A stretch of DNA of 64,000 bases from NCBI GenBank assembly GCA_025786725.1, contig JAHLTZ010000039.1:117186-181185 (forward strand). Direction: 5' to 3'. The translations under genes and the position numbers were made by a program. Shown here one piece after another: positions 11,645 through 61,364 of the stretch. Below the pieces are notes generated by a model, which saw only the letters and a list, made by a program, of their open reading frames with translations, was not told the origin of the DNA and did no database searches. Numbering within the stretch: the stretch's first letter is position 1; every line of letters begins with the position of its first letter. The stretch is from Syncephalis fuscata S228 (Eukaryota > Fungi > Zoopagomycota).

Positions 11645-11649
11645 TAACC

Positions 11650-18093: not shown

Positions 18094-18549
18094 CTACAGT
18101 AGAATGAATATACAATAAACTACGTCAATACTAAACCACCATAGCCATCCTTGGGCTTGACAGCTGCCATCGCGATGATCCACTCGAGGCGATGCCCAGC
18201 GATATAAAAAGCTTGGTAGCTTAGTAGTTTCCCATTGAATACGACACCAATCGACAAATAGCGTGGTAGTATTTTTTTGAGTTAGTGTATAGGTACTATG
18301 TGACTCTTCTTCATCCGCTAATAGTAATTCAATAGCCTGGTTATCTGTATTCAAACGCATATCTTCATCTTCACTGGTCTATATTATTCATTAGTGTAGT
18401 CTATGTCATTCAATTAACAAATAGCTTACATTCCTAGACCACCAACGGCGTTCGCCTGTCCATCGCGGCATCCATAGAATACGCACCATACTATGAATTA
18501 CCAACCATAATAGCGTATAGCCACCTAACCAAACTGTCCATGTACTCAT
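18094..18549 (-). pseudogene. Truncated duplicate of the site-2 protease 5' end (direct repeat copy 2, 18117-18553)
   Basis: Encodes the same N-terminal peptide to GWLWWF, then reads into unrelated sequence and stops at 18094. Confidence 0.9.
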
Positions 18550-40789: not shown

Positions 40790-43700
40790 TGAACTGAGTG
40801 ATGAGTGACATCAATCATCAAATACTCATCATAGATCCGTTATCCAGTATGCATATATCCACCGTTTACCTATATCATTCCCATTCTGTCCCACACTACT
40901 ATGTATCATTCTACAATACACTAGACACATTTTATTGTTTATACGCGGCAATATACTTTGCTCATTCCACTCATTACACTATGCGCACTATAACACAATT
41001 ATCCATTTCATTCTCATGGTATTTCTATCATAACTTAATCTATTTAAATGCACACCACTCGTAACATACAAAGCAATAAAGTAATTGCAGATATTAACAT
41101 AGCAATATACCACTATCTGAATCCATTGCTGTAGCTACACATGCTGTTATTGGTCGCTATATATAGACTATGCAATCTCAGTTTCACCAACTGCTTAACA
41201 CGAATGTCGCCTATGCTGCCCACTTTCTTCACCACTCTTCTCCTATTCCACTACTACCACTATGTATTTTTGCTACAAGAATACGTGAATTGCTTTTGCA
41301 ACTTACAATTGCAGCGAGCTATGCTGTAGTGCACGCTAAAACGTCTGCTTGTGGCACACACGAATACACATATTATTATTAGGCTAGCTGGACGAGTTGT
41401 GTACTAGATACGCACTTTAGAGCTATCGATATTACATTGTGTTGTGTTGTGCAATGCTTGTTTGTCTGCTCATTTGTTACAAGCTGTGACAGAAGGACGG
41501 CACACTTGTTGACGGACGCCACTAAAGCAACTGTTGTAATAGTAGTGCCCAGTACAAATATTCAAAGGGCTATCCAGTTGGTATAACACCACTAAACTAG
41601 CTGCTGCAATAGTGCAACTGTTTAGCAGTGGGTGCTGTGGTGGTCTAAATAGGACTCAGTGAAAAGTTCTGCCAAGTGGAGGGTCGCTTGAATGGTGTAG
41701 TTGGCCGCTACTTTTACGGTGTTATTTTAGTGGTGCACTGGTGTGTGGGACTAGTATAATGGATATACAGCCATTGTTGCTATGTCACAGAATATGGACG
41801 ATGAAGGCACTTGCCCCGATGTAGTGTGTAGCATACTGTTTGTTGGCAGTTCACTGCTAGCTTGCAGCTTGCGTATGGGTTGCTTTGAAGGATTATCTCT
41901 TACATGTTGCCAATATCATAATATTATTGGCACTATCAAGATAGCTTCTTCAGCTCAACTATGGACCTATCCATACAAGAATTGGCGTGGGCTACGTAAT
42001 AGTTGCAGCTATGCGATTGTGTGGTATTATAGCATAATATCACACTGTCTGCAAACAGGATGGGTGGAGCGCAGCTTGGATGTTCTATATAGTGCAGCGA
42101 TTGTTTTGTATCTGCATTTGAGTCACATCGTGAATTCAGTGTGTCGGCTGTTTTTATTGCATTCGAGCATCATCTGGAAATTCAGTGCAATACGAAACAA
42201 CTCTTTGCGCTATTTTAACGGTTGCTACATATTGTACACTGCTTTATTACGGTATTATGTGTGCATGTATGGTTAAGTGCATTAATATAACACTGTTGTA
42301 AAGCGGTGATGTAGCGATGACGGCAAAGTGGGAGCTTCATATATTTGGTGTTGTCTTTATTTAGGTGTAGGGATATATCTATTGAGGGTGCTACGTCATT
42401 AAAGGTGCTACTCAAATATGTGGAGTAATTGCTTTGTGCTGGGCTGAATGCTTCCATACTGTCGTTTGTTACATGCTGCATCGGGGCTTTTAACAATTAT
42501 AAATATTAGATTATAAGATAACCATTTAGATTATATAATTTAGAACATTAACTTAATATACATATGTTGTAATTATACGACAGGTACATAGCAATTTATA
42601 ACTATTAATTATAATATTAACGGGAAATTATTAGATTAAGATCATGGATACAACTGCACATAGTTTCAAGGACACCTGGTGCCGTACAAGAGGATCGTCC
42701 AAGTAGCAAATGCCAGTTTTATGGAGTGCCGTCGTTTGGATTTTTAGTCATTCAAGCCGTTACTATTTTTATTTAATATACCACATTTACTTATTATTTA
42801 ATTACTAGAGTGGCTCGGTGTTGTATATTATTGTCAAATTGCTGCCGCCTATTACAAGAGTGCAATAAAATAATACATTCAATTCTTATAGCCTATACTT
42901 GATCAGCATAATTAGAGTAGCTGTATATTAATAAATATTCTATTTTTCATTCATATTGCATTTGATTGTATTGTTTGAGTATGCATCAATATTACACATT
43001 AGTAATAAATAGGCTCATTAATTTACATGATATGAAATGCTTATTGATTATGTATGTATAACAAACTGGTTGGTTTAAATCAACATCGACTGTTGTAATA
43101 AGCATTGCACAGTTAATGTATTTAAAACACTGTACTAGCAAATTTAAAATAGATTATTTACTGCGCAGTGCGCTGTAATTATGCTGTATAATCATAGCTG
43201 CAATTGGTATTTTGTGCACTTTGAATCAATGTTCCATTGATGGTGTTGTTCGTGCGTCATTGGTTCAGCTGCCACCTTGCATGCCAGTGCTGGCATATAG
43301 CTAGCTAAATAAAAGTGACGCGCTGCCACCTTTGTTATCTATCTTTATTTGAGCTTTATTTTTGTCGGAACACGTACTTTGCTTGCCAAGTTTATTGTAA
43401 ACATGTCGTCTTCAAACAACTCCACCTCATATGGCAATGCTGAGCCATCTTATCATGCCGCGTCGTTGGCATCTAACGACACTCCGCTTAAGTCGCTATC
43501 ACATTCTAGCCACGTACCAGATGCTGTTAATACATCAGTTGCTGGCCCATCCGCCTCCCCCGTCCCTCCTGCCTCTACTATATCTACTGCTTCTACTGCA
43601 GCCAATGCACCACTTAAACCATCTGATGACGACAGTATAAACACCTGCTTCCTCAAAAAGACGCCCATGCTATGGGACAGCCTGCCTCATGCTGAGATGC

Positions 43701-46380
43701 GTGATGTAGCTGGATGGATAGAAGTGTTCGACTTGGAACGCACAGGTAAGTAAAAGTTTATAAATAACTGTGGTGTAATTGGCTGATCAATATTATAGAG
43801 ATATTGATAAAAGCTGGGCAAACTTTTATCTTTGGAGTGGCGTCGAGTGGTAAGTATTGAATTAACTACTATTTGGGGTAAAATGACTTTTACTAACAAC
43901 TATGTAACGATGACTTTATTAATATAGTGATTATGTTATTCCGGGGGCAGAGGTACCTGAACAATGGTTCCGTATATTTATGGTAATTGCCATATCAACG
44001 TTTAATAACTTGTACTAATTATTACGGGTTGATATAGGAAGGGAACTTGATTATGTTCCAAGTAAGTATATTATTTTTATTTCCATTTATAACTAAATTT
44101 TATTTAGAACATTAGTGACGATCCATTAACTGGTAATTATAAAAATATCACTTAATTATACACTAACATGCTGTACAGTTAATGGCAAATGGTGAAAACA
44201 CCAAAAAATTATTTTTTTGAATGGCGGTTTTATCAGTATTCCTGGCCTGTGAAAGTAGGTTATAAAATAGTTATAATTATTATAATTAATAATCAATTAT
44301 TAGTAACCTTTCGCGTGTATAATCTGGAACTCACAGACCACATTGTACCCGACAACAGCCCAGATTATAAAATGGTAGGTTTAATTAACATATGATATTA
44401 AAATAATTTAACACAATAACGTATAGGCTGTTGGAAAAAAATATACCATCAGCAAGGCCATACTTGGGTCGTGAGTGTAGCAATAATTATTATTGCAATA
44501 TATTAACTGTTAATATTTACTAGTGGAACCTTTGGCAAAGTATATGTAGCAGAGATTAATGCCACAGGCGAACGCGTCGCCATAAAAAAGTCCAGCAATG
44601 GACTGGAAAAAACTCAAGAGGAGGCAGATTTAGCTGTTATAACATTCGTATCTGAAATTCAGATACTTCACGAGCTCGATAATCCGTTTATGGTCAAAAT
44701 GTTGGATTTTATGGCTACAGCAAAGTTCAACTACGTTGTGCTCGAGATGGCAGAGGGTGGTGATTTAAAAAACTATCTAAAGCTGCACCACCCCCTGCCA
44801 GAGCCTGCAGCACAGTATATTGTGCACCAACTAATGCGTGGATTGAAGGTGAGTAATAATTATACCAGTTGATATTATACTAACACAGATCAATTAGTAC
44901 CTGCATAAAAATAACATTATTCATCGGGGTAAGTGTAATGGTTATTTATTAGCAACATTTGGTAATTGTATGTGATTTCACCATCAAACATTAGACATTA
45001 AAGTAAGTAACAATTGGCAATGCAATATAATCAACTAATGTTGCTGTAGCCCAAAAACATCCTTTTGCGCGGACATCACAAGTACCCGCATGTGATGTAT
45101 TCCGACTTTGGGCTGGCGTGCCAGCTGGAAGATGCCAATGCACTTGCAGACGATTACCGTGGTACGCCAATTTTTATGGCGCCTGAGGTCTTTTTGGGAA
45201 GCAAGGGAGGGCGTGCTATTATCGAACAAGCAGCTGCGAAATCTAAGTCGTCCAACACATTTGATGTCTCTGACCATGCTGTTGATGGATATGGCAAAGA
45301 GGTTGATGCATGGAGTCTGGGCGTAACAATATATTCTTTATTCTCAAGTAAGTTCTAACAGACTAGATTATTATGTTTTTATTAACACATGTAATAGAAA
45401 AGCATCCGTTTGAGGGATTTACGGATATTCACTTTCTTGTACGCAAGATGATAAATGATGAGCCTCAGTTCAGCGGCGAAGTGTGGAAGACTGTTACAGA
45501 TCAAGGTAAGTAATATGGTTTAGATTTATACAATTTATTAATACAATTGCAGCTATAGGATTTATAGCTGCTTTGTTGAATCCAAGCCCATCGGCCAGAT
45601 ACACGGCTGGAATGGCGCTAAAGAATTCATGGCTTAGCGAGCCATTCAAAACGCTGGTTGAGCGATATCGCGACCCTCAGCTATTGGAAGAACTCAAGGA
45701 CCTGGAAGAAGACGAAGAAACCGAGCAAACTGAGCTGACCAAACTAAAGGACAGCGCTCAACCAATCCAAGACACGGACAAGGAAGAGCCAGAAGTGGCC
45801 CAAAAACAAGCAACTGGCACAGAAGATGAGCTAGTTCAACAAGAAGATGAGCAGGATGAAGAAGCGAAAGAGGAAGAAGCAGCGGAAGAGCTGGTACAGA
45901 ATGTACAAGAAGAAGCATTGGTTAGCAAAAAAGACTTGGCTGCTGAAGATAAGCAAGCAGCTAAGCAAGAAGAACCGGCCAAAGAAGAGCAGGAGCAACA
46001 AAGTCAGTTAAACCTGCTTTTTCCAAGGTCAAAAAGCGCCAGCTTTCTCATGCTTCAGAGAATGAAGCTGAAGAAGGCAAGCGCAACAAACTTGGTAAGT
46101 ACATACTAATAATACATTATAATAACTAACATCAATATTAGACGATGATTTTTAAACATGTACTTAGTTTTGTGCATTAAATAAATTGTTTTTATTAATT
46201 ATTTAATGTGATTCAGTGTCAAATGACTAAATTTAATAACATTCGCGCAATTGCACTGCACATTCACTCTATTGAACATGGGGACAAGTGGTGAGTTTTA
46301 TTTAATCGTCACATCATCACACTTATTGCTTTTTGGGGACAAATGACTAATATTTAATAACATCCAATCTATTGAACATG
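40790..46380 (+). repeat. Tandem ~5.59-kb unit, copy A (element + spacer + kinase gene)
   Basis: 40798-43350 is repeated almost identically at 46388-48954 (offset ~5590), and 43348-44464 continues at 60245-61364. Confidence 0.95.
43403..46155 (+). CDS. FHA-like + Ser/Thr kinase (Mek1/Chk2-like), copy 2
   Basis: Exons splice to ILGSGTFGKV, VAIK, SEIQIL, HRDIKPKNILL, DFG, GTPIFMAPE, DAWSLG, an E-rich tail and KKR...KRNKLDDDF. As assembled it has 1-nt indels in the FHA exons relative to copy 3 and one near 46000 (errors or incipient pseudogene). Confidence 0.8.
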
Positions 46381-46455
46381 ATGATGGGTGGTGAGTGACA
46401 TCAGTCATCAAATACTCGTCATCATAGATTCGTTATCCAGTATGCATATATCCAC
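46201..46455 (+). repeat. Kinase-cassette-associated conserved element at the tandem junction (two internal sub-repeats)
   Basis: CAAATGACTAA..TTTAATAACAT...CTATTGAACATG...GTGGTGAGT occurs twice (46220-46296 and 46340-46396), followed by the hairpin core. Confidence 0.9.
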
Positions 46456-48954
46456 CGTTTACCTATATCATTCCCATTCTGTCCCACACTACTATGTATC
46501 ATTCTACAATACACTAGACACATTTTATTGTTTATACGCGGCAATATACTTTGCTCATTCCACTCATTACACTATGCGCACTATAACACAATTATCCATT
46601 TCATTCTCATGGTATTTCTATCATAACTTAATCTATTTAAATGCACACCACTCGTAACATACAAAGCAATAAAGTAATTGCAGATATTAACATAGCAATA
46701 TACCACTATCTGAATCCATTGCTGTAGCTACACATGCTGTTATTGGTCGCTATATATAGACTATGCAATCTCAGTTTCACCAACTGCTTAACACGAATGT
46801 CGCCTATGCTGCCCACTTTCTTCACCACTCTTCTCCTATTCCACTACTACCACTATGTATTTTTGCTACAAGAATACGTGAATTGCTTTTGCAACTTACA
46901 ATTGCAGCGAGCTATGCTGTAGTGCACGCTAAAACGTCTGCTTGTGGCACACACGAATACACATATTATTATTAGGCTAGCTGGACGAGTTGTGTACTAG
47001 ATACGCACTTTAGAGCTATCGATATTACATTGTGTTGTGTTGTGCAATGCTTGTTTGTCTGCTCATTTGTTACAAGCTGTGACAGAAGGACGGCACACTT
47101 GTTGACGGACGCCACTAAAGCAACTGTTGTAATAGTAGTGCCCAGTACAAATATTTAAAGGGCTATCCAGTTGGTATAACACCACTAAACTAGCTGCTGC
47201 AATAGTGCAACTGTTTGGCAGTGGGTGCTGTGGTGGTCTAAATAGGACTCAGTGAGAAGTCCTGCCAAGTGGAGGGTCGCTTGAATGGTGTAGTTGGCCG
47301 CTACTTTTACGGTGTTATTTTAGTGGTGCACTGGTGTGTGGGACTAGTATAATGGATATACAGCCATTGTTGCTATGTCACAGAATATGGACGATGAAGG
47401 CACTTGCCCCGATGTAGTGTGTAGCATACTGTTTGTTGGCAGTTCACTGCTAGCTTGCAGCTTGCGTATGGGTTGCTTTGAAGGATTATCTCTTACATGT
47501 TGCCAATATCATAATATTATTGGCACTATCAAGATAGCTTCTTCAGCTCAACTATGGACCTATCCATACAAGAATTGGCGTGGGCTACGTAATAGTTGCA
47601 GCTGTGCGATTGTGTGGTATTATAGCATAATATCACACTGTCTGCAAACAGGATGGGTGGAGCGCAGCTTAGATGTTCTATATAGTGCAGCGATTGTTTT
47701 GTATCTGCATTTGAGTCACATCGTGAATTCAGTGTGTCGGCTGTTTTTATTGCATTCGAGCATCATCTGGAAATTCAGTGCAATACGAAACAACTCTTTG
47801 CGCTATTTTAACGGTTGCTACATATTGTACACTGCTTTATTACGGTATTATGTGTGCATGTATGGTTAAGTGCATTAATATAACACTGTTGTAAAGCGGT
47901 GATGTAGCGATGACGACAAAGTGGGAGCTTCATATATTTGGTGTTGTCTTTATTTAGACGTAGGTATATGTGATGAGGGCGCTACGTCATTAAAGGTGCT
48001 ACTCAAATATGTGGAGTAATTGCTTTGTGCTGGGCTGAATGCTTCTATACTGTCGTTTGTTACATGCTGCATCGGGGCTTTTAACAATTATAAATATTAT
48101 ATTATAAGATAACCATTTAGATTATATAATTTAGAGCATTAATTTAATATACATATGTTGTAATTATACGACAGGTACATAGCAATTTATAATTATTAAT
48201 TATAATATTAACGGGAAATTATTAGATTAAGATCATGGATACAACTGCACATAGTTTCAAGGACACCTGGTGCCGTACAAGAGGATCGTCCAAGTAGCAA
48301 ATGCCAGCTTTATGGAGTGCCGTCGTTTGGATTTTTAGTCATTCAAGCCGTTACTATTTTTATTTAATATACCACATTTACTTATTATTTAATTACCAGA
48401 GTGGCTCGGTGTTGTATATTATTGTCAAATTGCTGCCGCCTATTACAAGAGTGCAATAAAATAATACATTCAATTCTTATAGCCTATACTTGATCAGCAT
48501 AATTAGAGTAGCTGTATATTAATAAATATTCTATTTTTTATTCATATTGCATTTGATTGTATTGTTGGAGTATGCATCAATATTACACATTAGTAATAAA
48601 TAGGCTCATTAATTTACATGATATGAAATGCTTATTGGAAATGAATATTGTTATGTATGTATAACAAACTGGTTGGTTTAAATCAACATCGACTGTTGTA
48701 ATAAGCATTGCACAGTTAATGTATTTAAAACACTGTACTAGCAAATTTAAAATAGATTATTTACTGCGCAGTGCGCTGTAATTATGCTGTATAATCATAG
48801 CTGCAATTGGTATTTTGTGCACTTTGAATCAATGTTCCATTGATGGTGTTGTTCGTGCGTCATTGGTTCAGCTGCCACCTTGCATGCCGGTGCTGGCATA
48901 TAGCTAGCTAAATAAAAGTGACGCGCTGCCACCTTTGTTATCTATCTTTATTTG

Positions 48955-49298
48955 TGTGGTAAAGGAAATGTGCTGGTGCCAATTTTACTAATTTTAGCTG
49001 ATGAACACATAGCTCGGCTTTGCCACTCTAAGCATGGCGCGCTTTTAATATAAATAAGATGAATAGTGCGCGTATAATTAAAAAAAAAAAAAAACAAGGA
49101 GCAGTTCACGTTTGAGTTATATTTAGTCGTTTATCTTAAAGCAAGTCCGAGTACTTGTGGAGTTTATTCGTGTGGTCATATACATCTCAGAGTTGAGGTG
49201 TCGTGTCAATTACTATCGTAGTTATCATTTTAAGCGTACACTTAAATCCTTTTCAGGATGAGCCTTCCAACAAATCGTGGAAACGAACAACTACCACA
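48955..49298 (+). repeat. Element A 5' LTR
   Basis: Matches 59901-60244 except for one A/G change seen in the A-tract. Confidence 0.97.
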
Positions 49299-51225
49299 AC
49301 TGGAGCCCAATGCGGGGGGCTCTAGAGTGCACGCCTACCCCGTGAAGCCGCCCAAGCGTTATAATGGAGGATGTATCGAGGAATTTCTATCACAATATGA
49401 TAAATACGCGAGATATATGGAGTGGACAGATGAAGAAACCATCCGGTGTCTACTCAACTACACCAGAGGAGATGTTGCGCACATCGTAACGTCAAGTCCA
49501 GAAGGAATGAGTGGAGATTGGCAAGCGTTGAAGAAAGAACTGTTGATGGCGTATGGTAGGAAGCCCACTAAGAAGTCACCGGAAGAGCGAGTATCCGCGC
49601 TGCTTAAAAGCGGTTTCAATTATGCGCAGCCCGTATCATTCCTAAATCAATATAATCTATTGTGCAAATGTGTAATTGACATGCCAGAGCGTGAAAAAAT
49701 CCGAAGATTGTGCAAGATTATCGATAAGACTCATCTAAGAATGTGTTTTACCAAGATGCCGCGAGACAACTATACATATCAACAACTATGCGACGCGCTG
49801 GTGAACGTATGTGAAGACGACAAGGCGTTGCACATCGCCCTTGGTATAACAGATTCGGATAGAGACAGCGACATTGATAAGGATGAGAACGAATCAGATG
49901 AAGAAGCCGTCATCATCAAGAAGGAGAAGAAAGTCAAAGAGAGGATTAACAAGAAAGCAGATGAATCTGGAAAGAAGAATCAAGATCATATCACCATAGA
50001 ACGAAAGGTAGACGATTTATCAGAACAGTTCCGACAACTGGTGTTGTTAGTTGAAAAACAGCAAGACAACAGAGGACGAATGGACGGGCGAGACAGAAGG
50101 AATTTGCTGTGCTTGTATTGCGATTCGCCAGATCATGTTAAAAGTCAATGCGGACTATTGACTGATGATTTACGAAACAAATTGGTTACATTGGACGCTG
50201 GTAAAGTCACATACCCTAATGGTTCGCTTGTTCCGTTGAATACTGGTCGAGGCGGTATGCGCAAATTACTGGTCGATACGGCTAACGTACGGATGATCAC
50301 TGCCGAGCAACCGATCAAGTACGACCTTACTTGGGAAAGCGATGTTCAGTTAACGACTATAGAGCCAGAAATCGTAGTAGAGGATGTAGAACATATAGCC
50401 GAAGTCAATATGAAACGGGCACGTGTAGGCACTCGTCAAGCGTCGGAAGCGGTGCCAGTAGAAACCCGTGAAGCTGGTAGTATGACGGAAAGGCAGGCGC
50501 GGCCACCAGCCACGCATCAATACCGATCTGTCATCGAGGAAGGAGCCGATGTGGATGGCACTGTCGATAAGCTGCTACGTAGCGCGCAGGTGACGATGCC
50601 GCTACAAGATTACCTGTCAACATCGTCTGTTGCCAGAAAGAAGATGGCTGAGTTGGTCAGTCGTAAGAAGGTGCCTATCGATACAATGGTACAACAAGCC
50701 GTGGTGTATGTAGACGGATTGTCAACGATAGACGGCACTATAGTAGCTAGGCCAACAGCTAAAGTGACGGGACGAGTGGCAGGAGAGCCGGTAGAAATCC
50801 AAATCGATCCTGGTGCTGAAATAAGTGTAATATCTGGCAAGTTATATGACCAGATTGGTAGTCTACCATTGGATGCGGCGCGAGCATGGTCGATGGGTAA
50901 TGCTTCTGGTACAGCGTCTAAGTCTAGAGGCATGTGTATCAACGTACCAGTGACCATTGGAGGAGTAACGATAAACGCACATCTAATAGTTGTAGATGGA
51001 GCACCGTTCGACGCGTTGGTTGGAATGCCTTGGTTAGAAGAAGCGTTATGGGAGGTCAAACGAGAAGACGGAAGAGCGTGGGTACACATAACTGATGGCC
51101 GAAGCGCGGCTAAGTTCCCTGCGGCTCCTACAATGGTATCAGCCAGTGGTAGAGGCCAGCAAGACCAACGTAAGAATGTGAATAGTGTTACGGTGCTGCG
51201 AGAAAAGAGAGTGAGGACGAAATAG
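49258..51225 (+). CDS. gag: Element A Gag-protease ORF
   Basis: Capsid-like N-terminus, zinc knuckle CLYCDSPDHVKSQC, aspartic protease IQIDPGAEISVI...ALVGMPWL; the ATG lies inside the LTR. Confidence 0.9.
   Translation: MSLPTNRGNEQLPQLEPNAGGSRVHAYPVKPPKRYNGGCIEEFLSQYDKYARYMEWTDEETIRCLLNYTRGDVAHIVTSSPEGMSGDWQALKKELLMAYGRKPTKKSPEERVSALLKSGFNYAQPVSFLNQYNLLCKCVIDMPEREKIRRLCKIIDKTHLRMCFTKMPRDNYTYQQLCDALVNVCEDDKALHIALGITDSDRDSDIDKDENESDEEAVIIKKEKKVKERINKKADESGKKNQDHITIERKVDDLSEQFRQLVLLVEKQQDNRGRMDGRDRRNLLCLYCDSPDHVKSQCGLLTDDLRNKLVTLDAGKVTYPNGSLVPLNTGRGGMRKLLVDTANVRMITAEQPIKYDLTWESDVQLTTIEPEIVVEDVEHIAEVNMKRARVGTRQASEAVPVETREAGSMTERQARPPATHQYRSVIEEGADVDGTVDKLLRSAQVTMPLQDYLSTSSVARKKMAELVSRKKVPIDTMVQQAVVYVDGLSTIDGTIVARPTAKVTGRVAGEPVEIQIDPGAEISVISGKLYDQIGSLPLDAARAWSMGNASGTASKSRGMCINVPVTIGGVTINAHLIVVDGAPFDALVGMPWLEEALWEVKREDGRAWVHITDGRSAAKFPAAPTMVSASGRGQQDQRKNVNSVTVLREKRVRTK
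49301..49318 (+). promoter_or_regulatory. Element A primer-binding site (probably tRNA-Lys)
   Basis: TGGAGCCCAATGCGGGG lies 2 nt after the LTR; its complement ...CCCCGCATTGGGCTCCA resembles fungal tRNA-Lys(CTT) 3' ends. Confidence 0.75.
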
Positions 51226-52644
51226 TGATAGGTACGATTACCATGCGTGAATCAGTAACAACAGGTAATACTGCGTCCGTGTATGCCGCTAAATACAAGC
51301 CGGTCGGAAAGAAGAAATTACCAATTGCCGTGGCAGTACCAAACGGAGAAGAAGCTGAAGACGAAGAACGAATTGAGAGCAGCGAGTCAAGATTGACTGA
51401 TGAGCGTATAGCAGACATGGTTATTGGAAACGGTCAGTTAACAGAAGAAGAGACCGCGTACTTCATTGAGCAATTACGCTCTATAGACGAAGTTTTTGCA
51501 TTCAACGACGGAGAGATGGGTAAGCTTAAGGCGGAAATAGAACCACCTGTAAGAATACCAACTGTACCGCATGTGCCATGGACGCAAGCTTCGATACCGG
51601 TACCAAGAGCAACATTCAGTAGAGTAGTAGAGTTATTGCGGGAAAAGATGAATAGCGGAATTATTGAGCCAAGTACTGGTGCTTATAGTAATCGATGGTT
51701 TGTGATTGCTAAGAAAGATGGATCTAAGTTGCGATTCATACAAGACCTACAACAAGCCAATTCTGTTAGTATCAAGAATGCCAATGCACCGCCGCTGTCA
51801 GAAGAACTTACTGAAGACGTGTCAGGTAGATCTATTATATCTACGTTTGATCTATATTCCGGTTACGATCAAATCCCTGTCGACAATCGTGATCGTGATA
51901 TATTCTCATTGATGACGCCGATTGGACTGGTGAGGATGACACGGTTACCTATGGGTTGGTGTAATAGTGTCGGAGTGTTTCAGCGGATCGTAAATAAGAT
52001 ACTGAGTGAGTATATGCCGCATACAGTAGGCATATTCGTGGACGACGGGATAGTTAAAGGATCGGTGGAGAAGAATGAAAGTATTGTATTGCCAGGAGTG
52101 AGAGCGTTTGTGTTTGATCATGTAGCTGACGTAGTAAAAGTGTTAAAGGCTTTGAGTAAGGCGGGAATAACAGTCAGTGGAAAGAAATGCAGATTTGGTA
52201 TGGATGAGGTGGAAGTGTTAGGTTACCAGTGTACCCAACTAGGAAGAACTGTAACTCCGGATAAGACGGTTAAGATTACGCAATGGCCAACACCAGTCGA
52301 TAAGAAGCAAGTACGAGCATTTGTGGCCTGTTGTGCATTCTACCGAGTGCTTATTCCTCACTTCTCTACGATCGCCGAGCCATTGTATTATCTACAGAAG
52401 AAGAAAGTAGTATTTCACTGGAAAGGTGAACAACAACGAGCATTCGATGCGCTAAAACGAAGTATTAGTGAAAGACCAGTCATACGACCGCCGGTGTATG
52501 GTGACGACAATCGACCACTTATCTTAACAGTAGATGCTAGTCCTGTTGGTGCTGGCGCTGTGTTGGGACAATGCGATGAAGAAGGAGTGAAGTATGCTGT
52601 GCGGTATGACAGTTGTTTATTTAACGGTGCGCAGAGACGATACG
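51225..52644 (+). CDS. pol: Element A pol, 5' part (RT and start of RNase H)
   Basis: DLYSGYDQI, RLPMGWCNS, FVDD and LTVDAS motifs; interrupted at RRY by element B. Confidence 0.93.
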
Positions 52645-52982
52645 TGTAACAAAAATTCTCCCTCTCATTTATTATTACCATTTTTAGACATTATGATCGG
52701 TGTTTAAACACACCGATCATCACACATGGTCCACGATGAAGTTAACACTCCGCCACCGCGTATTGTTTTATCTTTATCTTTTATTTTCTTTTATTTTTAT
52801 TTTATTTTCTTTTATTGTTCTACTTAGATATTCCATATATCCAATAGAACAATATAAATACGCGTATGATTATGACCACAAATAAAGACATTAGTTCACT
52901 TTCAATATTCATTTTTATTTTATATACATTATTGTATTGTGACTCGTAGTAACCGCAACAGTTCGCTGTATCTACGGTTACA
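52645..52982 (+). repeat. Element B 5' LTR
   Basis: Appears identical to 57871-58208 and, as reverse complement, to 61365-61702. Confidence 0.97.
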
Positions 52983-52984
52983 TA

Positions 52985-53002
52985 TGGTAGCAACGGGTAG
53001 TT
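52985..53002 (+). promoter_or_regulatory. Element B primer-binding site (probably initiator tRNA-Met)
   Basis: TGGTAGCAACGGGTAGTT lies 2 nt after the LTR; its complement ends GCTACCA, as in fungal initiator tRNA-Met. Confidence 0.7.
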
Positions 53003-53039
53003 TAAACCTATCCACCTCGTTGCCTTGACTTACAGTGAT

Positions 53040-54224
53040 ATGAACCAACGACGTGGTGCGAAATACTTCGACCACGAACAAGCCCGTCAATCTTTCGCCG
53101 ACGAACTCATCCAAGATCCACCAGTAACCTTTCGATACCCAGATAACCAGTACGAACCACCGATCACAAGCCACACGAACGAATACACCGATACCCAGTA
53201 CGAACCACCGATCACAAGCCACACGAACGAATACACTACTGATACTCAAGAAGAAATAACACCCATTATGAACCCAGAATTGCCTAACACAAGTTTCGTT
53301 ACCAACGCTGACTTTATTTCAAGTTTGGTAACGCAAATTGTGTCCCAAAATAATGCTGCTACTGCCGATGCTGTTGTTACTGCCGCTGCCAATACTGCCG
53401 CTGCTATTGCCGCTATTCCATCTACTTCTGTCACTGCCCCTCCTACTGCTCGTCCATCTGCCCCGCCACGATACAACGGCAATGATAAGGATATTTCAGT
53501 AGAGACTTGGTTGTACCGTGCACGGCAATATGTCAGGTATATCCCTGATGAAATTGAACGCATCGAAGTAGCCGCCACTTATTTAGATGGCACTGCCTCT
53601 AGTTGGTGGCAGAGTAATACTATTCACTCTGACGGTGACTATAGTCATCCATATACCACTTGGAGTGCGTTTGCTCACGCACTACGCCAACACATCTGTC
53701 CCGGTACTTCGGTAGAAGAAGACGCTTTTAGTCGTCTTCACATGTTACGACAAGCCAACAAAAGTGTCAATGATTATACGTTAGAATTTAACAATTTAAG
53801 GCACACTTTTCCTATGCCTGATTCCGAAATGTGGCAGTTAGCTTTACGTATTATGTTTATTAATGGACTGAATCACGAAGTTAAATACGAAGTACAAAAA
53901 GCTACACCGTCTACATTACAATCAGCCATAGAAGTGGCTACTCATTTTGATTCGTTACGCAAGTACATTGGCAAATCATCAACTAACAACGTTCGCCATA
54001 ACACACCTCGTCCAACGCAACAACAACAGTTTCGCCCTCCGATTAACACACAACCAAGAAATGGCCCTATACCAATGGAACTAGACACCATTAATCGGTT
54101 ACCCCCACTCACTGATGCTGAACGCGAAACGTTACGACAAAACGGCGGCTGTTTCCGCTGTCGCCAATATGGCCACATCATGCGTTTTTGTCCTTTGAAT
54201 ACGGGAAAAGTCCAGCACCAGTAG
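53040..54224 (+). CDS. gag: Element B Gag
   Basis: Retrotransposon gag features ([25 protein letters not shown]), GPIPMELD and zinc knuckle [14 protein letters not shown]. Confidence 0.93.
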
Positions 54225-57200
54225 TGTCAGCATCACAACCTACTGGTGCCCAACTAAATACTATTTCTGTTGATGCCACCCCCGATCTTCTCTCGCTTAC
54301 TTCTGATGATGAATTGCTTGTTTCTGCGCCATTATTTCCTCATGCTAATGTTGTTGATGACACTGATGCACTTTTAAAGGAACAAAGTTTATTGTCAAAA
54401 TATCCACACGCTCACGATTTATTACGTATCAATGCTCGTTTATTAGGTAGAAAAGTTACGGTACTAATAGATAGTGGAGCAGCTGATAACTTTGTATCCG
54501 CAAATCTTGTGAAACATATTCGCGCACACACCCATAAAGTTAAATACCCATCGACCGTACACGTGGCAGATGGCCGTTCGTATACGTGTGACCGCCAACT
54601 GGCTGGTGCGCTCCTTACTTCCACTGGTTACAAAGACCGTTTATCGTTTTTGGTTGTTCCTTTAGAACACGACGTAATACTCGGTAAACCGTGGCTAGCC
54701 CGCTATAATCCACAGATAGATTGGTTAATTAACACTGTTACGTTTATGCATGATAATCGACACATTGTATGGCAAGCAAATGCACATAGACAACCAACCA
54801 TATTGCCATTATCTGCCTTACAATTTAAACGCTATGCTAAACGAACAGATGAATTACACCTAGCCATTGTACGACCAGCCGATAATCCGCTAAATGAAGC
54901 TGCTAATCACTCAAATGACCCATCCATCACTCCAGTATTGACTGGATTACGCAACGACTTTGCTGACGTATTTCCCGACAAACTACCGAAACAATTGCCG
55001 CCAAAACGTGATGGATTAGATCATCGTATCGATTTGATACCAGGCGCAACACCACCCAGTAACGCCTTATACCGATTGTCCCCTCTGGAACTTAAAGAAC
55101 TTAAAACACAACTTACCGAATTACTTGACGCGGGATATATTCGTCCTAGTATATCGCCCTACGGTGCGCCTGTTCTTTTCGTCAAGAAGAAAGATGGTGG
55201 TATGCGCATGTGTGTTGATTATCGAGCGCTGAATAAAATCACTATCAAGAACAAGTACCCATTGCCAAGGATTGAAGATTTATTCGACCAAGTGTTAGGC
55301 GCAACTGTCTTTTCTAAGATAGATCTACGCTCTGCTTATCATCAACTACGTGTAGTAGAAGAGGATATACCCAAGACGGCCTTTCGCACCCGCTATGGTC
55401 ACTTTGAATGGCTAGTAGTTAGTTTTGGTCAAAGTAATGCACCATCCAGTTTTCAAACACTGGTAAACTATCTATTTAGGCCATTACTAGACAAATGTGT
55501 TATTGTCTATTTGGACGATATTCTCATCTACAGTAAAACACCAGAAGACCACGAACGACACCTACGCCAAGTATTACAAATACTTCGCGACAACCACTTA
55601 TACGCCAAATGGTCAAAATGTGAATTATTTAAGGATGAAGTTGAATATTTAGGCCATTTGCTATGTGCTAATGGTGTAAAAGCTGATCCAGCTAAGATAA
55701 AGGCCATTTCTGATTGGCCTACACCACGAAACGTCACTGATATACGCGCTTTTACAGGCTTGGCCAACTACTATAGAAAGTTTATTAAAAATTACTCTGC
55801 TATAGCCACACCACTTACCGATCTACTATGTCAAGATCGTCGTTTCTTATGGACCATTGAAGCTCAAAAATCATTTGATATACTAAAGAAGACAATGACC
55901 CAAGCTCCAGTATTACAAATAGTCGACGTACATCAGCCTTTCCGTGTAGAAACCGATGCTTCTGGCTTTGCTGTAGGTGCTGCCTTGTTGCAGCAAGATC
56001 GTGATGGCCATTGGCACCCCATTGCTTATCATTCGCGCAAAATGAAGCCCGCTGAACGCAATTATCCGGTACATGAACAAGAACTATTAGCATTAATAGA
56101 TGCTTTAAAGATTTGGCGCCACTACTTACATGGATCGTCATTTCACGCGTATACTGACCATAAAACCTTGCAGTACTTCCAGAGTCAACCGAATTTATCA
56201 ACCAGACAAGCAAGATGGTCAGAACTATTACAAGAATATGACGTATTGATCGAATATAAGCCCGGGAAAAACAATATTGTAGCCGATTCATTATCCAGAC
56301 GGCCTGATTTACAACTGTCCAGTTTAACTACTGTCAGTTTTACATATATTGATCAAATTAAAAACTTGTACGCCAACGATGTTGACTTTGGTGAAATATA
56401 CGCCCAGCTTAATACGACAACGCCACTTCCAGCTCTTCGTACCAAGTTAGTCAAGTATCGACTAACTGATGGATTGTTATATTTCAACGGTGATCGATTA
56501 TGTGTACCTAAAAATAACCAATTACGTCAAGATATACTACACGATCATCACGATGCCATCGTAGCCGGCCATCTAGGTGTAGATAAAACATACCTGGCTA
56601 TTCATCGCCATTTTTACTGGCCATCACTACACAACACCGTCCACCGCTATGTCACTTCCTGCGATACTTGCCAACGTAATAAGGCCACTAATCGACGACC
56701 AGGTGGCTTATTACAACCACTTGAAATACCTGCACATGCATGGGACTCAGTTAGTATGGATTTTATTACACATCTACCACTCACTGAAAAAGGTGCAGAT
56801 GCGTTAATGGTAGTAGTTGACCGCTTTAGTAAACAAGCCCACTTCGTGCCTACTACCAACACTGTCACAGCTGTTGACACCGCACGACTATACTTCGACC
56901 ATGTATATCGTCTACATGGTCTTCCACGATCCATAATCTCTGATCGTGACCCACGATTTACTAGCCGATTCTGGGAAGCCTTATTTGAATTTACCGGTAC
57001 TAAATTAGCCAGATCAACTGCAAATCATCCACAGACTGACGGCCAGACTGAGCGAACCAACAGAACCATCGAAGAAATGTTACGTCATGTTATTAGCCAA
57101 CAACAAGATGATTGGGATAAATACTTACCTGCATTAGAATTTGCCTATAACAATAGTACTAACGCTACTACTGGTATTACACCTTTCTTCTCTGTATATG

Positions 57201-57856
57201 GACGTCATCCAATAACAACGACTATGCCAGCTGATAGCGATAATATAACAGTACCAGCAGCTGAGGAGTTTTTACAGCGACTAGAAGCGATACAAAAGGC
57301 GGTAAAAGACAACATATCGTACGCTCAGGATAGACAGGCACAATATGCTAACCAACGACGTCGAGATGACACCTTCCAAATAGGTGATCGAGTAATGCTG
57401 TCAACACGACACACAATGCCACGACACGTAGCAGAACAGTCAAACTCCGCCCTTCGTACGCGTAAAACTGGCCCGTACACTATCATAGAGGTCATTAGTC
57501 CGACCGCGTACAAGATCGAACTACCACCAGGCATGCGCATTCACCCAGTTATACACATCTCTCAGCTTACCAGGTATAAAGATCCGAACGTATTTCCAGG
57601 ACGACCAACGGCAATTACTATGCCTATGCCAGAAATGATTGAAGGACAAGCTGAGTGGGAAGTGGAAAGAATAATAGGTAGAAGAACAAGAAAAGTGGGG
57701 ATGAATGACGTGGAGGAATACTTAGTAAAATGGAAAGGATACTCAAAAGATGACAGTTCTTGGGAGCCAATTGAAAACTTGCAAAATGCTCAAGAACTAT
57801 TAAATCAATACGAACACTCCACACACATACGATTAGCACTTGGGACAAGCGCCTGA
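54188..57856 (+). CDS. pol: Element B Pol (PR-RT-RNase H-IN-chromodomain)
   Basis: LIDSGA, YLDD, VETDAS, HHCC and DDE integrase motifs, and [10 protein letters not shown]...YLVKWKGY...SWEP chromodomain. Confidence 0.97.
54203..54276 (+). promoter_or_regulatory. -1 ribosomal frameshift signal (slippery heptamer plus stem/pseudoknot)
   Basis: G GGA AAA at 54203-54209 in gag frame; perfect 10-bp stem 54215-54224/54240-54249; pol is in the -1 frame. Confidence 0.85.
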
Positions 57857-57867
57857 GAGGGAGGGGG
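57855..57867 (+). promoter_or_regulatory. Element B polypurine tract
   Basis: GAGAGGGAGGGGG, 3 nt before the 3' LTR. Confidence 0.9.
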
Positions 57868-57870
57868 TAT

Positions 57871-58208
57871 TGTAACAAAAATTCTCCCTCTCATTTATTA
57901 TTACCATTTTTAGACATTATGATCGGTGTTTAAACACACCGATCATCACACATGGTCCACGATGAAGTTAACACTCCGCCACCGCGTATTGTTTTATCTT
58001 TATCTTTTATTTTCTTTTATTTTTATTTTATTTTCTTTTATTGTTCTACTTAGATATTCCATATATCCAATAGAACAATATAAATACGCGTATGATTATG
58101 ACCACAAATAAAGACATTAGTTCACTTTCAATATTCATTTTTATTTTATATACATTATTGTATTGTGACTCGTAGTAACCGCAACAGTTCGCTGTATCTA
58201 CGGTTACA
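57871..58208 (+). repeat. Element B 3' LTR
   Basis: Direct repeat of 52645-52982. Confidence 0.97.
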
Positions 58209-58213
58209 ATACG

Positions 58214-59874
58214 CACAAGTCAAACGAGAATTATTTGGTTTATATCAGATGGTGAAGAAAATGAGGAAATATGTGCATGGTGTGAAATTTATCATTGAGA
58301 CAGACGCTAGACCTGTCATCGGCATGCTGAGAAAGCCTGATTTACCTAATGATGCAGCAAGTCGATGGGTAGCTTACCTTTCGTTGTTTAATTATGAAAT
58401 ACGTCATATTCCGGGTGATAAGAACGTAGTAGCTGATGCGCTTAGTCGTGTTGACATGGGACAAGAAATGTTGACAGATGAAGATGATGAAGATGACAAG
58501 GTGTTATGGAACTATCACATCGAGGACGTCAGCGGTGATGAATTATTTGGAGTGACTAGTGTCAAACAAGTTAATACTGATAAAATGACAGCTAGGTCGC
58601 CCTATTATTATTTATTGTATTTTCTCGAGCATGGTTGCATGCACAACGACTGTAATGATAGCAACAAGAAGAGGATTAGAACTCAGTTGAAGAAGTTTTT
58701 TATTAGCGATGGATTATTATTTCGGCGAGCGAAGACAGGAATGCCTAAGCGAGTCATAGGTGAAGAAGAAGAACAATTGCGTGTGACAACGATGGTGCAC
58801 GATGGACATCCATTTGCCCATAGAGGAGTAGAAGCAACATATAGGTTGTGCAGTGATCGATTTTATTGGTACGGGATGTACAACACTTGCAAAGAGGTGG
58901 TGAAAAGATGTGACATATGTCAGCGTACGCAAAGGAAAGGACAAGTAGAAGAGCTAAAACCGTTTATTGGTTCTACATTGTTCAAACGCATTGGATTCGA
59001 TTTAGTTAGACTTCCAGAAGCCACGACGGGTGAGATATATTTAGCAGTGGCCAGGGACGACTTCAGTGGATGGGTAGAAGCAAGAGCGCTGTGTAAAAAT
59101 AACGCGGTAGAAGCATACAAATTTTTATATGAAGATGTTATATGTCGGTTTGGTATACCTAGTGAAGTAGTAGCAGATCGTGGTGAACTTTATGGGCTGT
59201 TGATACGTCATGTAGCTGCTAAGGACGGAATTCGCATTAACTTCACAACAGCCTATCACCCCCAAGCAAATGGAATGATTGAACGAGGACATCAGGAACT
59301 AATGGGTGGACTGGTAAAAATAGTAGGAGAAGATTACGCAAACTGGCCTAAGTATTTGCACGCTGTGTTGTGGGCCGACAGAATTACCACTAAGCGTACA
59401 ACTCAGCGGAGCCCATATCAGCTGGTATACGGACAAGATTGTGTGTTGCCGTTTGACATAGATGAAGAAACTTGGCTTACCTTACAGTGGAAGAAAGAAA
59501 TGACGACTGAGGAATTATTAAGTATGCGGGCTAGACAATTATTATCAACCGCATGGGATAGGGAGGAAGCAGGAGTGAAGTTAGATAAGTCTAGGATGAA
59601 TAATAAGATGTATTACGACAAGAAGCAGAATGTTAGGAAGGGACCTGTTAAGATAGGAGAGATGGTATTACTTCGAGATAATAGACCCATACGTAAGACG
59701 GATGCTAAACTTACTCCAAGATGGATGGGACCATATATAGTGGTTGGTAGACCCAACAAGGGAGTATATGAGTTGACTGAGCTTGATGGTACGCGGATGC
59801 GAAGCACAATTTCCGGTAATCGCATAAAGCGATATTATGCGCCGATTATGACGGCTACATCTGGAAGTCAATGA
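58214..59874 (+). CDS. pol: Element A pol, 3' part (RNase H and integrase)
   Basis: Removing B and one TSD restores RRYAQVKRELFG; IETDARP, NVVADALSR, HHCC and DDE integrase motifs; no chromodomain. Confidence 0.93.
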
Positions 59875-59900
59875 AGTAACTTCCAACAGGGTCCCGCGGT

Positions 59901-60244
59901 TGTGGTAAAGGAAATGTGCTGGTGCCAATTTTACTAATTTTAGCTGATGAACACATAGCTCGGCTTTGCCACTCTAAGCATGGCGCGCTTTTAATATAAA
60001 TAAGATGAATAGTGCGCGTATAATTAAAAAAAAAAAAGAACAAGGAGCAGTTCACGTTTGAGTTATATTTAGTCGTTTATCTTAAAGCAAGTCCGAGTAC
60101 TTGTGGAGTTTATTCGTGTGGTCATATACATCTCAGAGTTGAGGTGTCGTGTCAATTACTATCGTAGTTATCATTTTAAGCGTACACTTAAATCCTTTTC
60201 AGGATGAGCCTTCCAACAAATCGTGGAAACGAACAACTACCACA
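59901..60244 (+). repeat. Element A 3' LTR
   Basis: Direct repeat of 48955-49298. Confidence 0.97.
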
Positions 60245-60299
60245 TTTGAGCTTTATTTTTGTCGGAACACGTACTTTGCTTGCCAAGTTTATTGTAAAC

Positions 60300-61364
60300 A
60301 TGTCGTCTTCAAACAACTCCACCTCATATGGCAATGCTGAGCCATCTTATCATGCCGCGTCGTTGGCATCTAACGACACTCCGCTTAAGTCGCTATCACA
60401 TTCTAGCCACGTACCAGATGCTGTTAATACATCAGTTGCTGGCCCATCCGCCTCCCCCGTCCCTCCTGCCTCTACTATATCTACTGCTTCTACTGCAGCC
60501 AATGCACCACTTAAACCATCTGATGACGACAGTATAAACACCTGCTTCCTCAAAAAGACGCCCATGCTATGGGACAGCCTGCCTCATGCTGAGATGCGTG
60601 ATGTAGCTGGATGGATAGAAGTGTTCGACTTGGAACGCACAGGTAAGTAAAAGTTTATAAATAACCGTGGTGTAATTGGCTGATCAATATTATAGAGATA
60701 TTGATAAAAGTTGGGCAAACTTTTATCTTTGGAAGTGGCGTCGAGTGGTAAGTATTGAATTAACTACTATTTGGGGTAAAATGACTTTTACTAACAACTA
60801 TGTAACGATGACTTTATTAATATAGTGATTATGTTATTCCGGGGGCAGAGGTACCTGAACAATGGTTCCGTATATTTATGGTAATTGCCATATCAACGTT
60901 TAATAACTTGTACTAATTATTACGGGTTGATATAGGAAGGGAACTTGATTATGTTCCAAGTAAGTATATTATTTTTATTTCCATTTATAACTAAATTTTA
61001 TTTAGAACATTAGCGGCGATCCATTAACTGGTAATTATAAAAATATCACTTAGTTATGCGCTAACATGCTGTACAGTTAATGGTAAATTGATGGAAAAAA
61101 CCAACAAAATTATTTTTTTAAATGGCGGGTTTATCAGTATTCCTGGCTGTGAAAGTAGGTTATAAAATAGCTATAATTATTATAATTAATAATCAATTAT
61201 TAGTAACCTTTCGCGTGTATAATCTGGAACTCACAGACCACATTGTACCCGACAACAGCCCAGATTATAAAATGGTAGGTTTAATTAACATATGATATTA
61301 AAATAATTTAACACAATAACGTATAGGCTGTTGGAAAAAAATATACCATCAGCAAGGCCATACT
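60300..61364 (+). pseudogene. FHA-like + kinase copy 3, 5' half, disrupted by a second copy of element B
   Basis: Exons splice in frame to ...ILIKVGQTFIFGSGVECDYVIPGAEVPEQWFRIFMEGNLIMFQNISGDPLTVNGKLMEKTNKIIFLNGGFISIPGCEITFRVY...KKYTISKAIL, then an LTR begins. Confidence 0.9.

What the first reader, a model, noticed from the sequence alone, without database searches (positions are those of the whole stretch)
40790..61364. A ~5.6-kb kinase cassette present in tandem and dispersed copies with no transposase of its own
Seen: a unit of conserved element + ~2.6-kb spacer + intron-rich FHA-like kinase gene occurs twice in tandem (offset ~5590, near identical). A strongly diverged inverted relative at ~12535-18115 has almost the same length, the same exon layout and the same 3' element. 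It sits between S2P and Nup98, flanked by a duplication of local sequence. Introns are retained, so spread was at the DNA level. Inference: a non-autonomous mobile or amplifying kinase cassette, possibly a selfish (drive or toxin-like) or effector gene family.
Basis: partly seen in the sequence, partly recalled or inferred. Interest (0 to 1): 0.85.

Follow-up and report, generated by a model that had tools for sequence, protein, structure and literature searches.

The report
Duplicated RNA-plus-kinase gene unit
A 5.6-kb unit holding a very abundant non-coding RNA gene and a kinase gene has been copied in tandem and to other places in this fungal genome, most likely by recombination at a common short repeat and not by transposition.

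Summary
The repeat is real, but it is not a simple tandem pair. Copy A (40781-46370) is whole. Copy B starts at 46370, is split by three young Ty3/Gypsy retrotransposon insertions, and runs off the contig end.

Two more whole copies (96-97% identical) lie on other contigs, plus one truncated copy. The kinase belongs to a family with at least 54 paralogous loci.

It starts about 10 bases after the kinase stop codon.

I found no unit-specific terminal inverted repeats, target-site duplications or shared sharp ends. Two copies also share 3.2 kb of flank beyond the unit. Divergence between copies is mosaic, which indicates gene conversion.

My reading: repeat-mediated segmental and tandem duplication inside an expanding gene family (about 0.6). 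Mobilisation through the flanking repeats remains possible (about 0.2).

The "spacer" is not empty. It yields an RNA 100-1000 times more abundant than the kinase mRNA, with no conserved ORF and a strongly structured + strand.

The kinase is spliced (14 introns, one 8-base micro-exon), keeps its catalytic motifs and has a degenerate FHA domain.

Earlier notes of this scan describe a comparable ncRNA-kinase pairing elsewhere in this genome.

The parts
40781..40994 (+). Left boundary of copy A: partial copy (right-hand 214 bp) of the dispersed repeat element
   Evidence: 98% identical to 46370-46587. Alignment to genome-wide copies. No significant left half upstream.
41350..42513 (+). Abundant non-coding RNA gene, copy A. 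Ends are approximate and the strand is inferred. A TATA-like box lies at 41161-41168.
   Evidence: The equivalent stretch of copy B has depth 12,000-69,000 in RNA run X1, against 35-585 over the kinase. The ORFs are not conserved between copies. MFE z-score is -5.9 on the + strand and -1.3 on the - strand. Changes in the diverged C322 copy mostly keep the predicted pairs.
43403..46180 (+). Kinase gene copy A: 15 exons, 14 GT-AG introns of 46-78 nt, and an 8-nt micro-exon at 44995-45002 that completes HRDIKPKN. The FHA domain is degenerate and the C-terminal tail is acidic. Relative to the other copies, A has a 1-base deletion after 43835 and an extra base at 44246.
   Evidence: Spliced RNA contigs. 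Splice sites and translation. Pfam Pkinase on exons. Indel table.
46191..46587 (+). Dispersed repeat element (397-bp shared part) at the A/B junction. It starts about 10 nt after the kinase stop codon. The unit boundary at 46370 lies inside it.
   Evidence: At least 40-70 copies at 85-97% identity. Related 0.8-1.3-kb elements with inverted arms: over 100 matches. DNA-run depth about 2800 against about 6.
46370..48954 (+). Copy B, left part: repeat element, RNA gene (about 46943-48106), intergenic region and start of the kinase 5' UTR
   Evidence: 98.1% identical to 40781-43351. RNA depth.
48955..60243 (+). Ty3/Gypsy LTR retrotransposon inserted in the 5' UTR of kinase copy B. LTRs are 48955-49298 and 59901-60243 (342 of 344 identical). 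The 5-bp target-site duplication is ATTTG.
   Evidence: gag, protease, RT, RNase H and integrase domains.
52645..58208 (+). Second Ty3/Gypsy chromovirus nested inside the first. LTRs of 338 bp are 100% identical. The target-site duplication is ATACG. One 1222-aa pol ORF ends in a chromodomain.
60244..61366 (+). Copy B, kinase 5' part (exons 1-8). The reading frame through the FHA-like domain is intact.
   Evidence: 98.3% identical to A 43347-44466. Translation.
61364..64000 (-). Second copy of the chromovirus, inverted, inserted in exon 8 of kinase copy B. It is cut off by the contig end.
   Evidence: 99.96% reverse-complementary to 55574-58209. The contig ends at window base 64000.
12538..18118 (-). 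Diverged relative (family 2). The kinase is on the - strand (about 12800-15400, about 40% aa identity to family 1). Upstream is a spacer whose + strand is structured.
   Evidence: tblastn. At least 10 near-identical and many diverged copies in the genome, with a shared end at 18118. z-score -3.8 on + and -1.7 on -.
11650..12656 (.). MITE/foldback-like element (two arms in inverted orientation) next to the 3' end of the family-2 kinase
11209..11644 (+). 436-bp direct repeat, first copy. The second copy is 18118-18553.
   Evidence: 98.6% identical. Found only next to family-2 units on C305, C130 and C370.

Best explanation
The 5.6-kb unit is a two-gene block: a highly expressed, structured non-coding RNA gene followed by a spliced kinase gene with a degenerate FHA domain. 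It was duplicated recently, in tandem and to other loci, by homologous recombination and segmental duplication, not by transposition.

Shown:
- Element sequence in direct orientation lies at the upstream edge of three of the four copies (a partial copy; the C329 copy is cut off before it) and as a longer segment just past the kinase stop codon in all four.
- The tandem junction is one intact repeat element.
- The copies differ in where their homology ends.
- The copies are mosaics of one another.

Inferred:
- Unequal crossing-over between the flanking element copies made the tandem pair.
- Ectopic recombination or larger segmental duplications placed the other copies.
- Gene conversion keeps mixing the copies.

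Copy B was later hit by three Ty3/Gypsy insertions. The unit is one young branch of a kinase family with at least 54 loci in this genome.
For: - Structure and breakpoints.
- Element copy number.
- Other copies sit in unique flanks, but C335 and C322 share 3.2 kb (98%) beyond the unit.
- No inverted termini. No clear target-site duplications.
- Mosaic divergence. A and C329 have 0 differences in about 800 bp of the kinase domain but 41 in about 800 bp of the FHA region, while B is closest to C335 there.
- Introns are retained and used.
- Family size.
- Order of events. Dispersed copies differ by 3-4%, the tandem pair by 1.9%, and the LTR pairs by 0-0.6%.
Against: - Three loci carry the same unit with both ends in the same repeat family, which is also what element-assisted movement would give.
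- At least five to six differently flanked family-2 copies end at the same base (18118). That is sharper than plain segmental duplication predicts.
- The left element of copy A lacks its left half, so the simple crossover model needs a truncated upstream repeat.
- Several carrier contigs are short (65-100 kb), so some 'dispersed' copies may belong to one unresolved region.
Confidence: 0.6

Rival explanations
1. The unit is mobilised through its flanking repeat elements. One route is a composite transposon moved in trans by the elements' transposase, as with foldback-flanked transposing elements or Pack-MULEs. Another is a circle that pops out between the two direct repeats and re-enters at any of the hundreds of element copies by homologous recombination.
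For: - Copies lie on at least three contigs with unique outer flanks.
- Both ends lie in the element.
- The right-hand element of C329 runs on as a canonical full-length family member, and that of C335/C322 switches to another subfamily near 46465-46530. Re-entry into different target copies would give this.
- Family 2 has a shared end at 18118.
Against: - The flanking elements are direct, not inverted, and the left one is partial.
- There is no target-site duplication and no common terminus.
- The far end of family 2 has no inverted copy of its element arm.
- No transposase partner was identified.
- C335 and C322 share flank beyond the unit.
Confidence: 0.2
2. Part of the apparent copy number comes from the assembly. 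C335, C322, C329 or C130 could be alternative haplotypes or unresolved pieces of one repeat-rich region, and the one-base indels could be polishing errors.
For: - The carrier contigs are short and the window ends inside a retrotransposon.
- C130 matches window 10800-18600 at 98% including the flanks.
- Every assembled copy has frame-breaking one-base indels, yet dN/dS is 0.2-0.4 and RNA contigs show an in-frame version.
Against: - Copies differ by 2-4% with different outer flanks.
- A and B lie on one contig and differ at about 50 sites.
- Long single-copy and retrotransposon ORFs in the window are intact, so the general indel error rate is low.
Confidence: 0.1
3. The kinases are a selfish (drive, toxin-antidote) or host-directed effector family, and selection for that role drives the amplification.
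For: - The family is large, diverges fast and is lineage-specific (31-46% identity between paralogues).
- The FHA-like patch is hypervariable beside a nearly invariant catalytic domain.
Against: - The N-terminus does not read as a signal peptide (by eye only; translations).
- dN/dS is below 0.4 even in the variable patch, where dS is also high. That fits conversion from a diverged donor and not positive selection.
- No partner gene with a toxin or antidote signature lies in the unit.
Confidence: 0.07

Closest known systems
Repeat-mediated segmental and tandem duplication (non-allelic homologous recombination between dispersed repeats, as with Alu- or LTR-mediated duplications)
   Same: Breakpoints lie in a high-copy repeat in direct orientation. 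One hybrid repeat sits at the tandem junction. Copy extents vary. Gene conversion continues among the copies.
   Different: The same 5.6-kb unit recurs at several loci with both ends in one repeat family, and the sister family shares one exact end.
Composite or cargo-carrying DNA transposons (foldback-flanked transposing elements of Drosophila, Pack-MULEs)
   Same: Host genes lie between copies of a non-autonomous element with long inverted arms. The unit has no transposase of its own.
   Different: The flanking copies are direct and one is partial. There is no target-site duplication and no constant terminus. Whole genes with their introns and promoters are carried, not fragments.
FHA-domain checkpoint kinases of the CAMK group (Chk2, Rad53, Cds1, Mek1)
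   Same: An N-terminal FHA-like fold pattern is followed by a Ser/Thr kinase domain with intact HRD, DFG and APE motifs. The nearest solved kinases are CAMK-group enzymes.
   Different: The FHA residues that bind phosphothreonine are replaced (GR to GS, SxxH to PEQW). Matches to solved kinases are weak (E about 1e-8), and Chk2 and Rad53 are not the top hits. The family has at least 54 loci, where a genome normally has one to three.
Ty3/Gypsy chromoviruses
   Same: The three insertions in copy B have LTRs, 5-bp target-site duplications, and gag, protease, RT, RNase H and integrase domains. The nested element also has a chromodomain.
   Different: They are insertions into the cassette, not the cause of its spread.

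Membership tests
Non-autonomous DNA transposon (TIR, MITE or Pack type) | Terminal inverted repeats at the two ends of the unit | tested here: not met
   Unit 1 ends carry the element in direct orientation. For unit 2, the 12538 end against the 18118 end scores 17, against a shuffle mean of 14.6 and maximum of 25.
Non-autonomous DNA transposon (TIR, MITE or Pack type) | Target-site duplication of constant length flanking each copy | tested here: not met
   No matching flank words at A, C335 or C329. The flanks are AT-rich and the ends differ between copies.
Non-autonomous DNA transposon (TIR, MITE or Pack type) | Same sharp termini in all copies | tested here: not met
   Family 1: the left ends are near 40781 (A), about 30-50 bp further out (C335) and at 41068 (C329). 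The right ends are near 46530 (C335/C322), and C329 runs on into a full element. Family 2 does share one end at 18118.
Non-autonomous DNA transposon (TIR, MITE or Pack type) | Autonomous partner with the same ends | not tested
No transposase ORF lies beside the element copies that I read.
Helitron | 5'-TC and 3'-CTRR ends with a subterminal hairpin, inserted between A and T | tested here: not met
   Read by eye at 12538 and 18118 and at 40781 and 46587. Neither strand shows these ends.
Retrocopy or LTR-type non-autonomous retroelement | Spread through an RNA intermediate (introns lost) | tested here: not met
   All 14 introns are present in the DNA of every copy and are removed in RNA contigs.
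Repeat-mediated segmental or tandem duplication | Breakpoints in pre-existing direct repeats, with one intact repeat at the junction | tested here: met
   The junction element 46191-46587 is collinear with genome-wide copies, and the unit boundary 46370 lies inside it.
Repeat-mediated segmental or tandem duplication | Variable extent of copies and sequence exchange between them | tested here: met
   C335 and C322 share 3.2 kb beyond the unit. Divergence is mosaic across 400-bp windows.
FHA-kinase of the Chk2/Rad53/Mek1 type | Kinase catalytic motifs intact | tested here: met
   GTFGKV, AIK, HRDIKPKN (completed by the micro-exon), DFG and APE are present in the RNA-supported model. Pfam Pkinase matches at E 5e-18 and 2.5e-12 on exons.
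FHA-kinase of the Chk2/Rad53/Mek1 type | FHA domain with the phosphothreonine-binding Arg, Ser, His and Asn | tested here: inconclusive
   By eye on the copy B translation: GR is GS, SxxH is PEQW, and NG is kept only in VNGK. No profile test was possible, because the domain is split over six exons of 8-26 codons and the joined model was not sent to search tools.
FHA-kinase of the Chk2/Rad53/Mek1 type | Closest solved relatives are Chk2/Rad53 | tested here: not met
   Top hits are CDK2, PLK4 and MARK2 for the N-lobe exon, and phosphorylase kinase, CASK, CaMKII and DAPK for the C-lobe exon, all at E of 1e-8 or weaker.
Ty3/Gypsy LTR retrotransposon (the insertions in copy B) | LTR pair, 5-bp target-site duplication, gag-PR-RT-RH-INT order | tested here: met

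The most novel reading that the evidence does not exclude
The unit is a co-amplifying module of a structured, extremely abundant non-coding RNA gene and a pseudo-FHA kinase gene. It spreads by a recombination-based route: excision as a circle between its flanking repeat copies, then re-entry at other copies of that repeat. The RNA and the kinase act together, which is why they are copied as a pair in two unrelated-looking versions (families 1 and 2).
Probability: 0.15. Interest if true: 0.8.

Novelty: new variant of a known kind. Interest (0 to 1): 0.5.

Why it matters
This looks like a gene family in the act of expanding. Young tandem and dispersed copies, gene conversion, retrotransposon hits and decay all appear within one 24-kb stretch.

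The more unusual point is that each kinase gene travels with a gene for a very abundant, structured RNA that has no known family. If the pairing is functional, it would be a new kind of RNA-kinase partnership in an early-diverging fungus. If the repeat-flanked unit does move, it would show how ordinary genes can become mobile without a transposase of their own.

Tried and rejected
- Known RNA families. Rfam at gathering score over the whole window found only one tRNA. Rfam at E up to 5 on the spacer found nothing credible. The element is not a tRNA, 5S or snRNA gene.
- Subtelomere idea. No (TTAGGG)4 exists anywhere in the assembly. The 10-bp TAAGACGGCG microsatellite is confined to 2.2-kb element arrays. 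The window also holds housekeeping genes, Nup98-96 and a ribosomal protein S2. I left this idea open and did not use it.
- Coding potential of the spacer. The 164-aa and 88-aa ORFs are broken by indels in other copies.
- Homology between the two spacers. None was found by sensitive blastn or by local alignment against shuffles.
- A degenerate left half of the element upstream of 40781. Not significant.
- C322 as the missing 3' part of copy B. Rejected, because the retrotransposon orientation does not fit.
- A whole-RNA folding z-score script timed out, so I used 600-nt pieces instead.
- The findings search by sequence returned nothing.
- The joined (spliced) kinase model was used only in local scripts and was never sent to a search, fold or family tool. 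Searches were run exon by exon by reference.
Full report
**Where the window lies**

The window is the last 64 kb of contig C305 of a 29.4-Mb, 371-contig eukaryotic assembly, and base 64000 is the contig end. Introns are short (46-78 nt, GT-AG). Ordinary genes lie nearby: Nup98-96 at about 22-25 kb and a ribosomal protein S2 gene at 35-36 kb. Earlier notes of this scan name the organism as the mycoparasite Syncephalis fuscata. I did not verify that.

**Checking the observation**

A self-comparison shows the following.
- 40781-43351 equals 46370-48954 at 98.1%, offset about 5590.
- 43347-44466 equals 60244-61366 at 98.3%.
- 48955-49298 equals 59901-60244 at 99.7%.
- 52645-52982 equals 57871-58208 at 100%.
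- 55574-58209 is the reverse complement of 61364-64000 at 99.96%.

Read together, copy A (40781-46370) is followed directly by copy B.

Copy B is interrupted three times.
- A Ty3/Gypsy element sits at 48955-60243, with the target-site duplication ATTTG, which is the sequence at 43347-43351 in A. This is in the 5' UTR, 52 nt before the start codon.
- That element carries a nested chromovirus at 52645-58208, with the duplication ATACG.
- A second copy of the chromovirus, inverted, sits in exon 8 at 61366 and runs to the contig end.

So the tandem is real in the assembly, but only 3.7 kb of copy B can be seen. The LTR pairs (99.4-100% identical) are younger than the A/B duplication (1.9% divergence).

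**Other copies**

The whole unit recurs at C335:57026-62714 (96%) and C329:38921-44352 (97%). The last 1.1 kb recurs at C322, cut by a chromovirus. A 70%-identical paralogue lies on C79.

Outer flanks:
- The left flanks of the C335 and C329 copies are unique sequence with small unrelated repeats.
- The right flank of C335 is 98% identical to that of C322 over 3.2 kb. That duplication therefore reached well beyond the unit.

**The 'element'**

Bases 46191-46587 match at least 40-70 assembled places at 85-97%. In the DNA runs its summed depth is about 2800, against about 6 for the rest of the unit.

Elsewhere it is the first part of a 0.7-1.3-kb repeat. That repeat has a partial inverted copy of itself, about 260-290 bp in the copies compared. 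It often stands in 2.2-kb arrays with a 10-bp microsatellite. A related 0.8-1-kb subfamily gave more than 100 matches.

It fits no Rfam family. I could not find clear target-site duplications for single copies, so I call it MITE/foldback-like and go no further.

In the kinase unit it starts about 10 nt after the stop codon (46178-46180). It has the same position in family 2 and on C79.

**Ends of the unit**

- Copy A begins with the right-hand 214 bp of the element, and no significant left half lies upstream.
- C335 keeps about 30-50 bp more.
- C329 is cut at position 41068.
- On the right, C335 and C322 leave the shared sequence near 46465-46530, while C329 runs on as a full canonical element.

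There are no inverted termini, no hairpin ends and no flanking duplications. In the sister family, the 12538 end has no inverted partner at 18118.

The tandem junction is one intact element. A crossover between an element at the 3' end and a partial one upstream would give exactly this.

**Exchange between copies**

Differences per 400 bp are very uneven.
- The RNA core 41176-41975 differs at 1-4 sites between any two copies.
- A and C329 are identical over about 800 bp of the kinase domain but differ at 41 sites across 43561-44356.
- B is closer to C335 than to A in the 5' gene part (98.8% against 98.4%).

This mosaic is the mark of gene conversion. An earlier follow-up on other DNA of this genome reached the same reading (s1-640408).

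**The kinase gene**

Contigs of run X1 carry GT..AG joints, so X1 is RNA and the gene is transcribed and spliced.

From the joints and the sequence, the model has 15 exons. One is an 8-nt micro-exon (44995-45002) that completes HRDIKPKN. GTFGKV, AIK, DFG and APE are present. Exons match Pfam Pkinase.

The nearest solved kinases match only weakly, at E of 1e-8 or weaker. The C-lobe exon hits CAMK-group enzymes, and Chk2 and Rad53 are not among the top hits for either exon.

The segment before the kinase domain has the FHA pattern, but by eye GR is GS and SxxH is PEQW (copy B translation). A profile test was not possible, because the domain is split over six tiny exons.

**State of the copies**

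Every assembled copy is damaged.

| Copy | Lesion |
|---|---|
| A | Lacks a base after 43835 and has an extra one at 44246 (stops in between) |
| B | Broken by retrotransposons |
| C322 | Broken by a retrotransposon |
| C335 | Lacks a base at 43557 |
| C329 | Four one-base deletions in exons |
| C335 and C329 | Share a gap of about 80 nt in the acidic tail |

The RNA contigs carry the in-frame version at 43835 and 44246. They also carry variants seen in no assembled copy.

dN/dS is 0.19-0.28 over the kinase and tail. It is 0.19-0.38 over the FHA part, where dS is also high between B and C329. So the protein was under constraint for most of the divergence. The lesions are either recent or partly polishing errors, and I cannot tell which.

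**Family size**

The exon-12 peptide finds 54 matches with the same exon limits, and all but the C329 copy have an open frame. The two intact family-1 copies are 99-100% identical, C329 is 65% with a stop codon, half the exon on C79 is 71%, and the rest are 31-46%.

The inverted relative at 12538-18118 is about 40% identical in protein. It has at least 10 near-identical copies (C130, C370 twice, C190, C197, C199 and others) and many diverged ones.

At least 10 hits end at the position of 18118. C305:61576, C190, the two C345 copies, C343 and C33 do not continue into the window's flank. This is the best argument for a discrete mobile end, and I could not follow it up.

The 436-bp repeat that flanks the relative in the window also lies between two such units on C370. 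It may therefore be part of a 6.9-kb tandem unit, not a target duplication.

**The spacer is a gene**

In RNA run X1, the stretch 46781-48173 has summed depth 12,000-69,000, against 35-585 over the kinase. The DNA runs show the same low depth for both.

The transcribed part is about 46943-48106, which equals 41350-42513 in A. No joints were seen. No ORF is kept between copies.

- The + strand of 41800-42400 folds far better than shuffles (z -5.9), and the - strand does not (z -1.3).
- In the 70-78% identical C322 copy, 7 predicted pairs change on both sides and about 30 on one side while staying paired, and about 15 break.
- With one diverged sequence this is suggestive only.
- A TATA-like box lies at 41161-41168 on the + strand.

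I infer a structured non-coding RNA, probably on the same strand as the kinase.

The spacer of family 2 is unrelated in sequence. It is also structured on one strand (z -3.8), there the strand opposite to the kinase. Earlier follow-ups of this scan describe a roughly 45-60-copy, highly expressed, structured RNA gene family that sits head-to-head with kinase genes of this family. My data agree for expression and structure. They suggest that family 1 has a different RNA in a different orientation.

**Verdict**

The evidence favours recombination at a common repeat, followed by gene conversion and decay, within a large expanding kinase family. It does not show a transposon, and it gives no support for a drive, toxin or effector role.

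The co-duplicated abundant RNA is the most interesting feature. The scan has already noted the comparable ncRNA-kinase pairing on other DNA of this genome.

Noticed in passing
window 46781-48173 (equal to 41190-42580 in copy A): An RNA from the 'spacer' is 100-1000 times more abundant in run X1 than the neighbouring kinase mRNA. No splice joints were seen, it has no conserved ORF and no Rfam match, and its + strand is strongly structured.
   Followed up: partly
window 43960-44356: The FHA-like exons are the most variable part of the unit between copies (12-32 differences per 400 bp), next to a kinase domain with 0-4. dS is also high there, which points to conversion from a diverged donor and not to positive selection.
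   Followed up: partly
L022 (C340:47845-52692); also C318, C337, C113, C290, C304, C2, C235: The repeat element forms arrays of 2.2-kb period. Copies alternate in inverted orientation and are separated by about 560 bp of a 10-bp microsatellite (TAAGACGGCG / TAAGACGGTA). Many arrays lie near contig ends. No (TTAGGG)4 exists in the assembly.
   Followed up: partly
L027 (C157:434841-439971) and L028 (C24:712000-717145): A 5.1-kb segment that starts at an element arm is present on both contigs at 96.6% in opposite orientation relative to the element. This is another duplication bounded by the same repeat.
   Followed up: no
window 16410-17640: This part of the family-2 spacer matches many places in the genome. 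These include short tandem arrays of about 915-bp period on C7, C329 and C335, which are contigs that also carry kinase units.
   Followed up: no
   Followed up: partly
window 60204-60650: An ATG in the 3' LTR of the inserted retrotransposon opens a frame that runs into exon 1 of kinase copy B (148-aa ORF).
   Followed up: no
L013:6763-6997 (C335:56763-56997) and L018:4458-4579 (C329:44458-44579): Two further small dispersed repeats, of about 110-230 bp and each with dozens of copies, lie directly outside the unit copies on C335 and C329.
   Followed up: no
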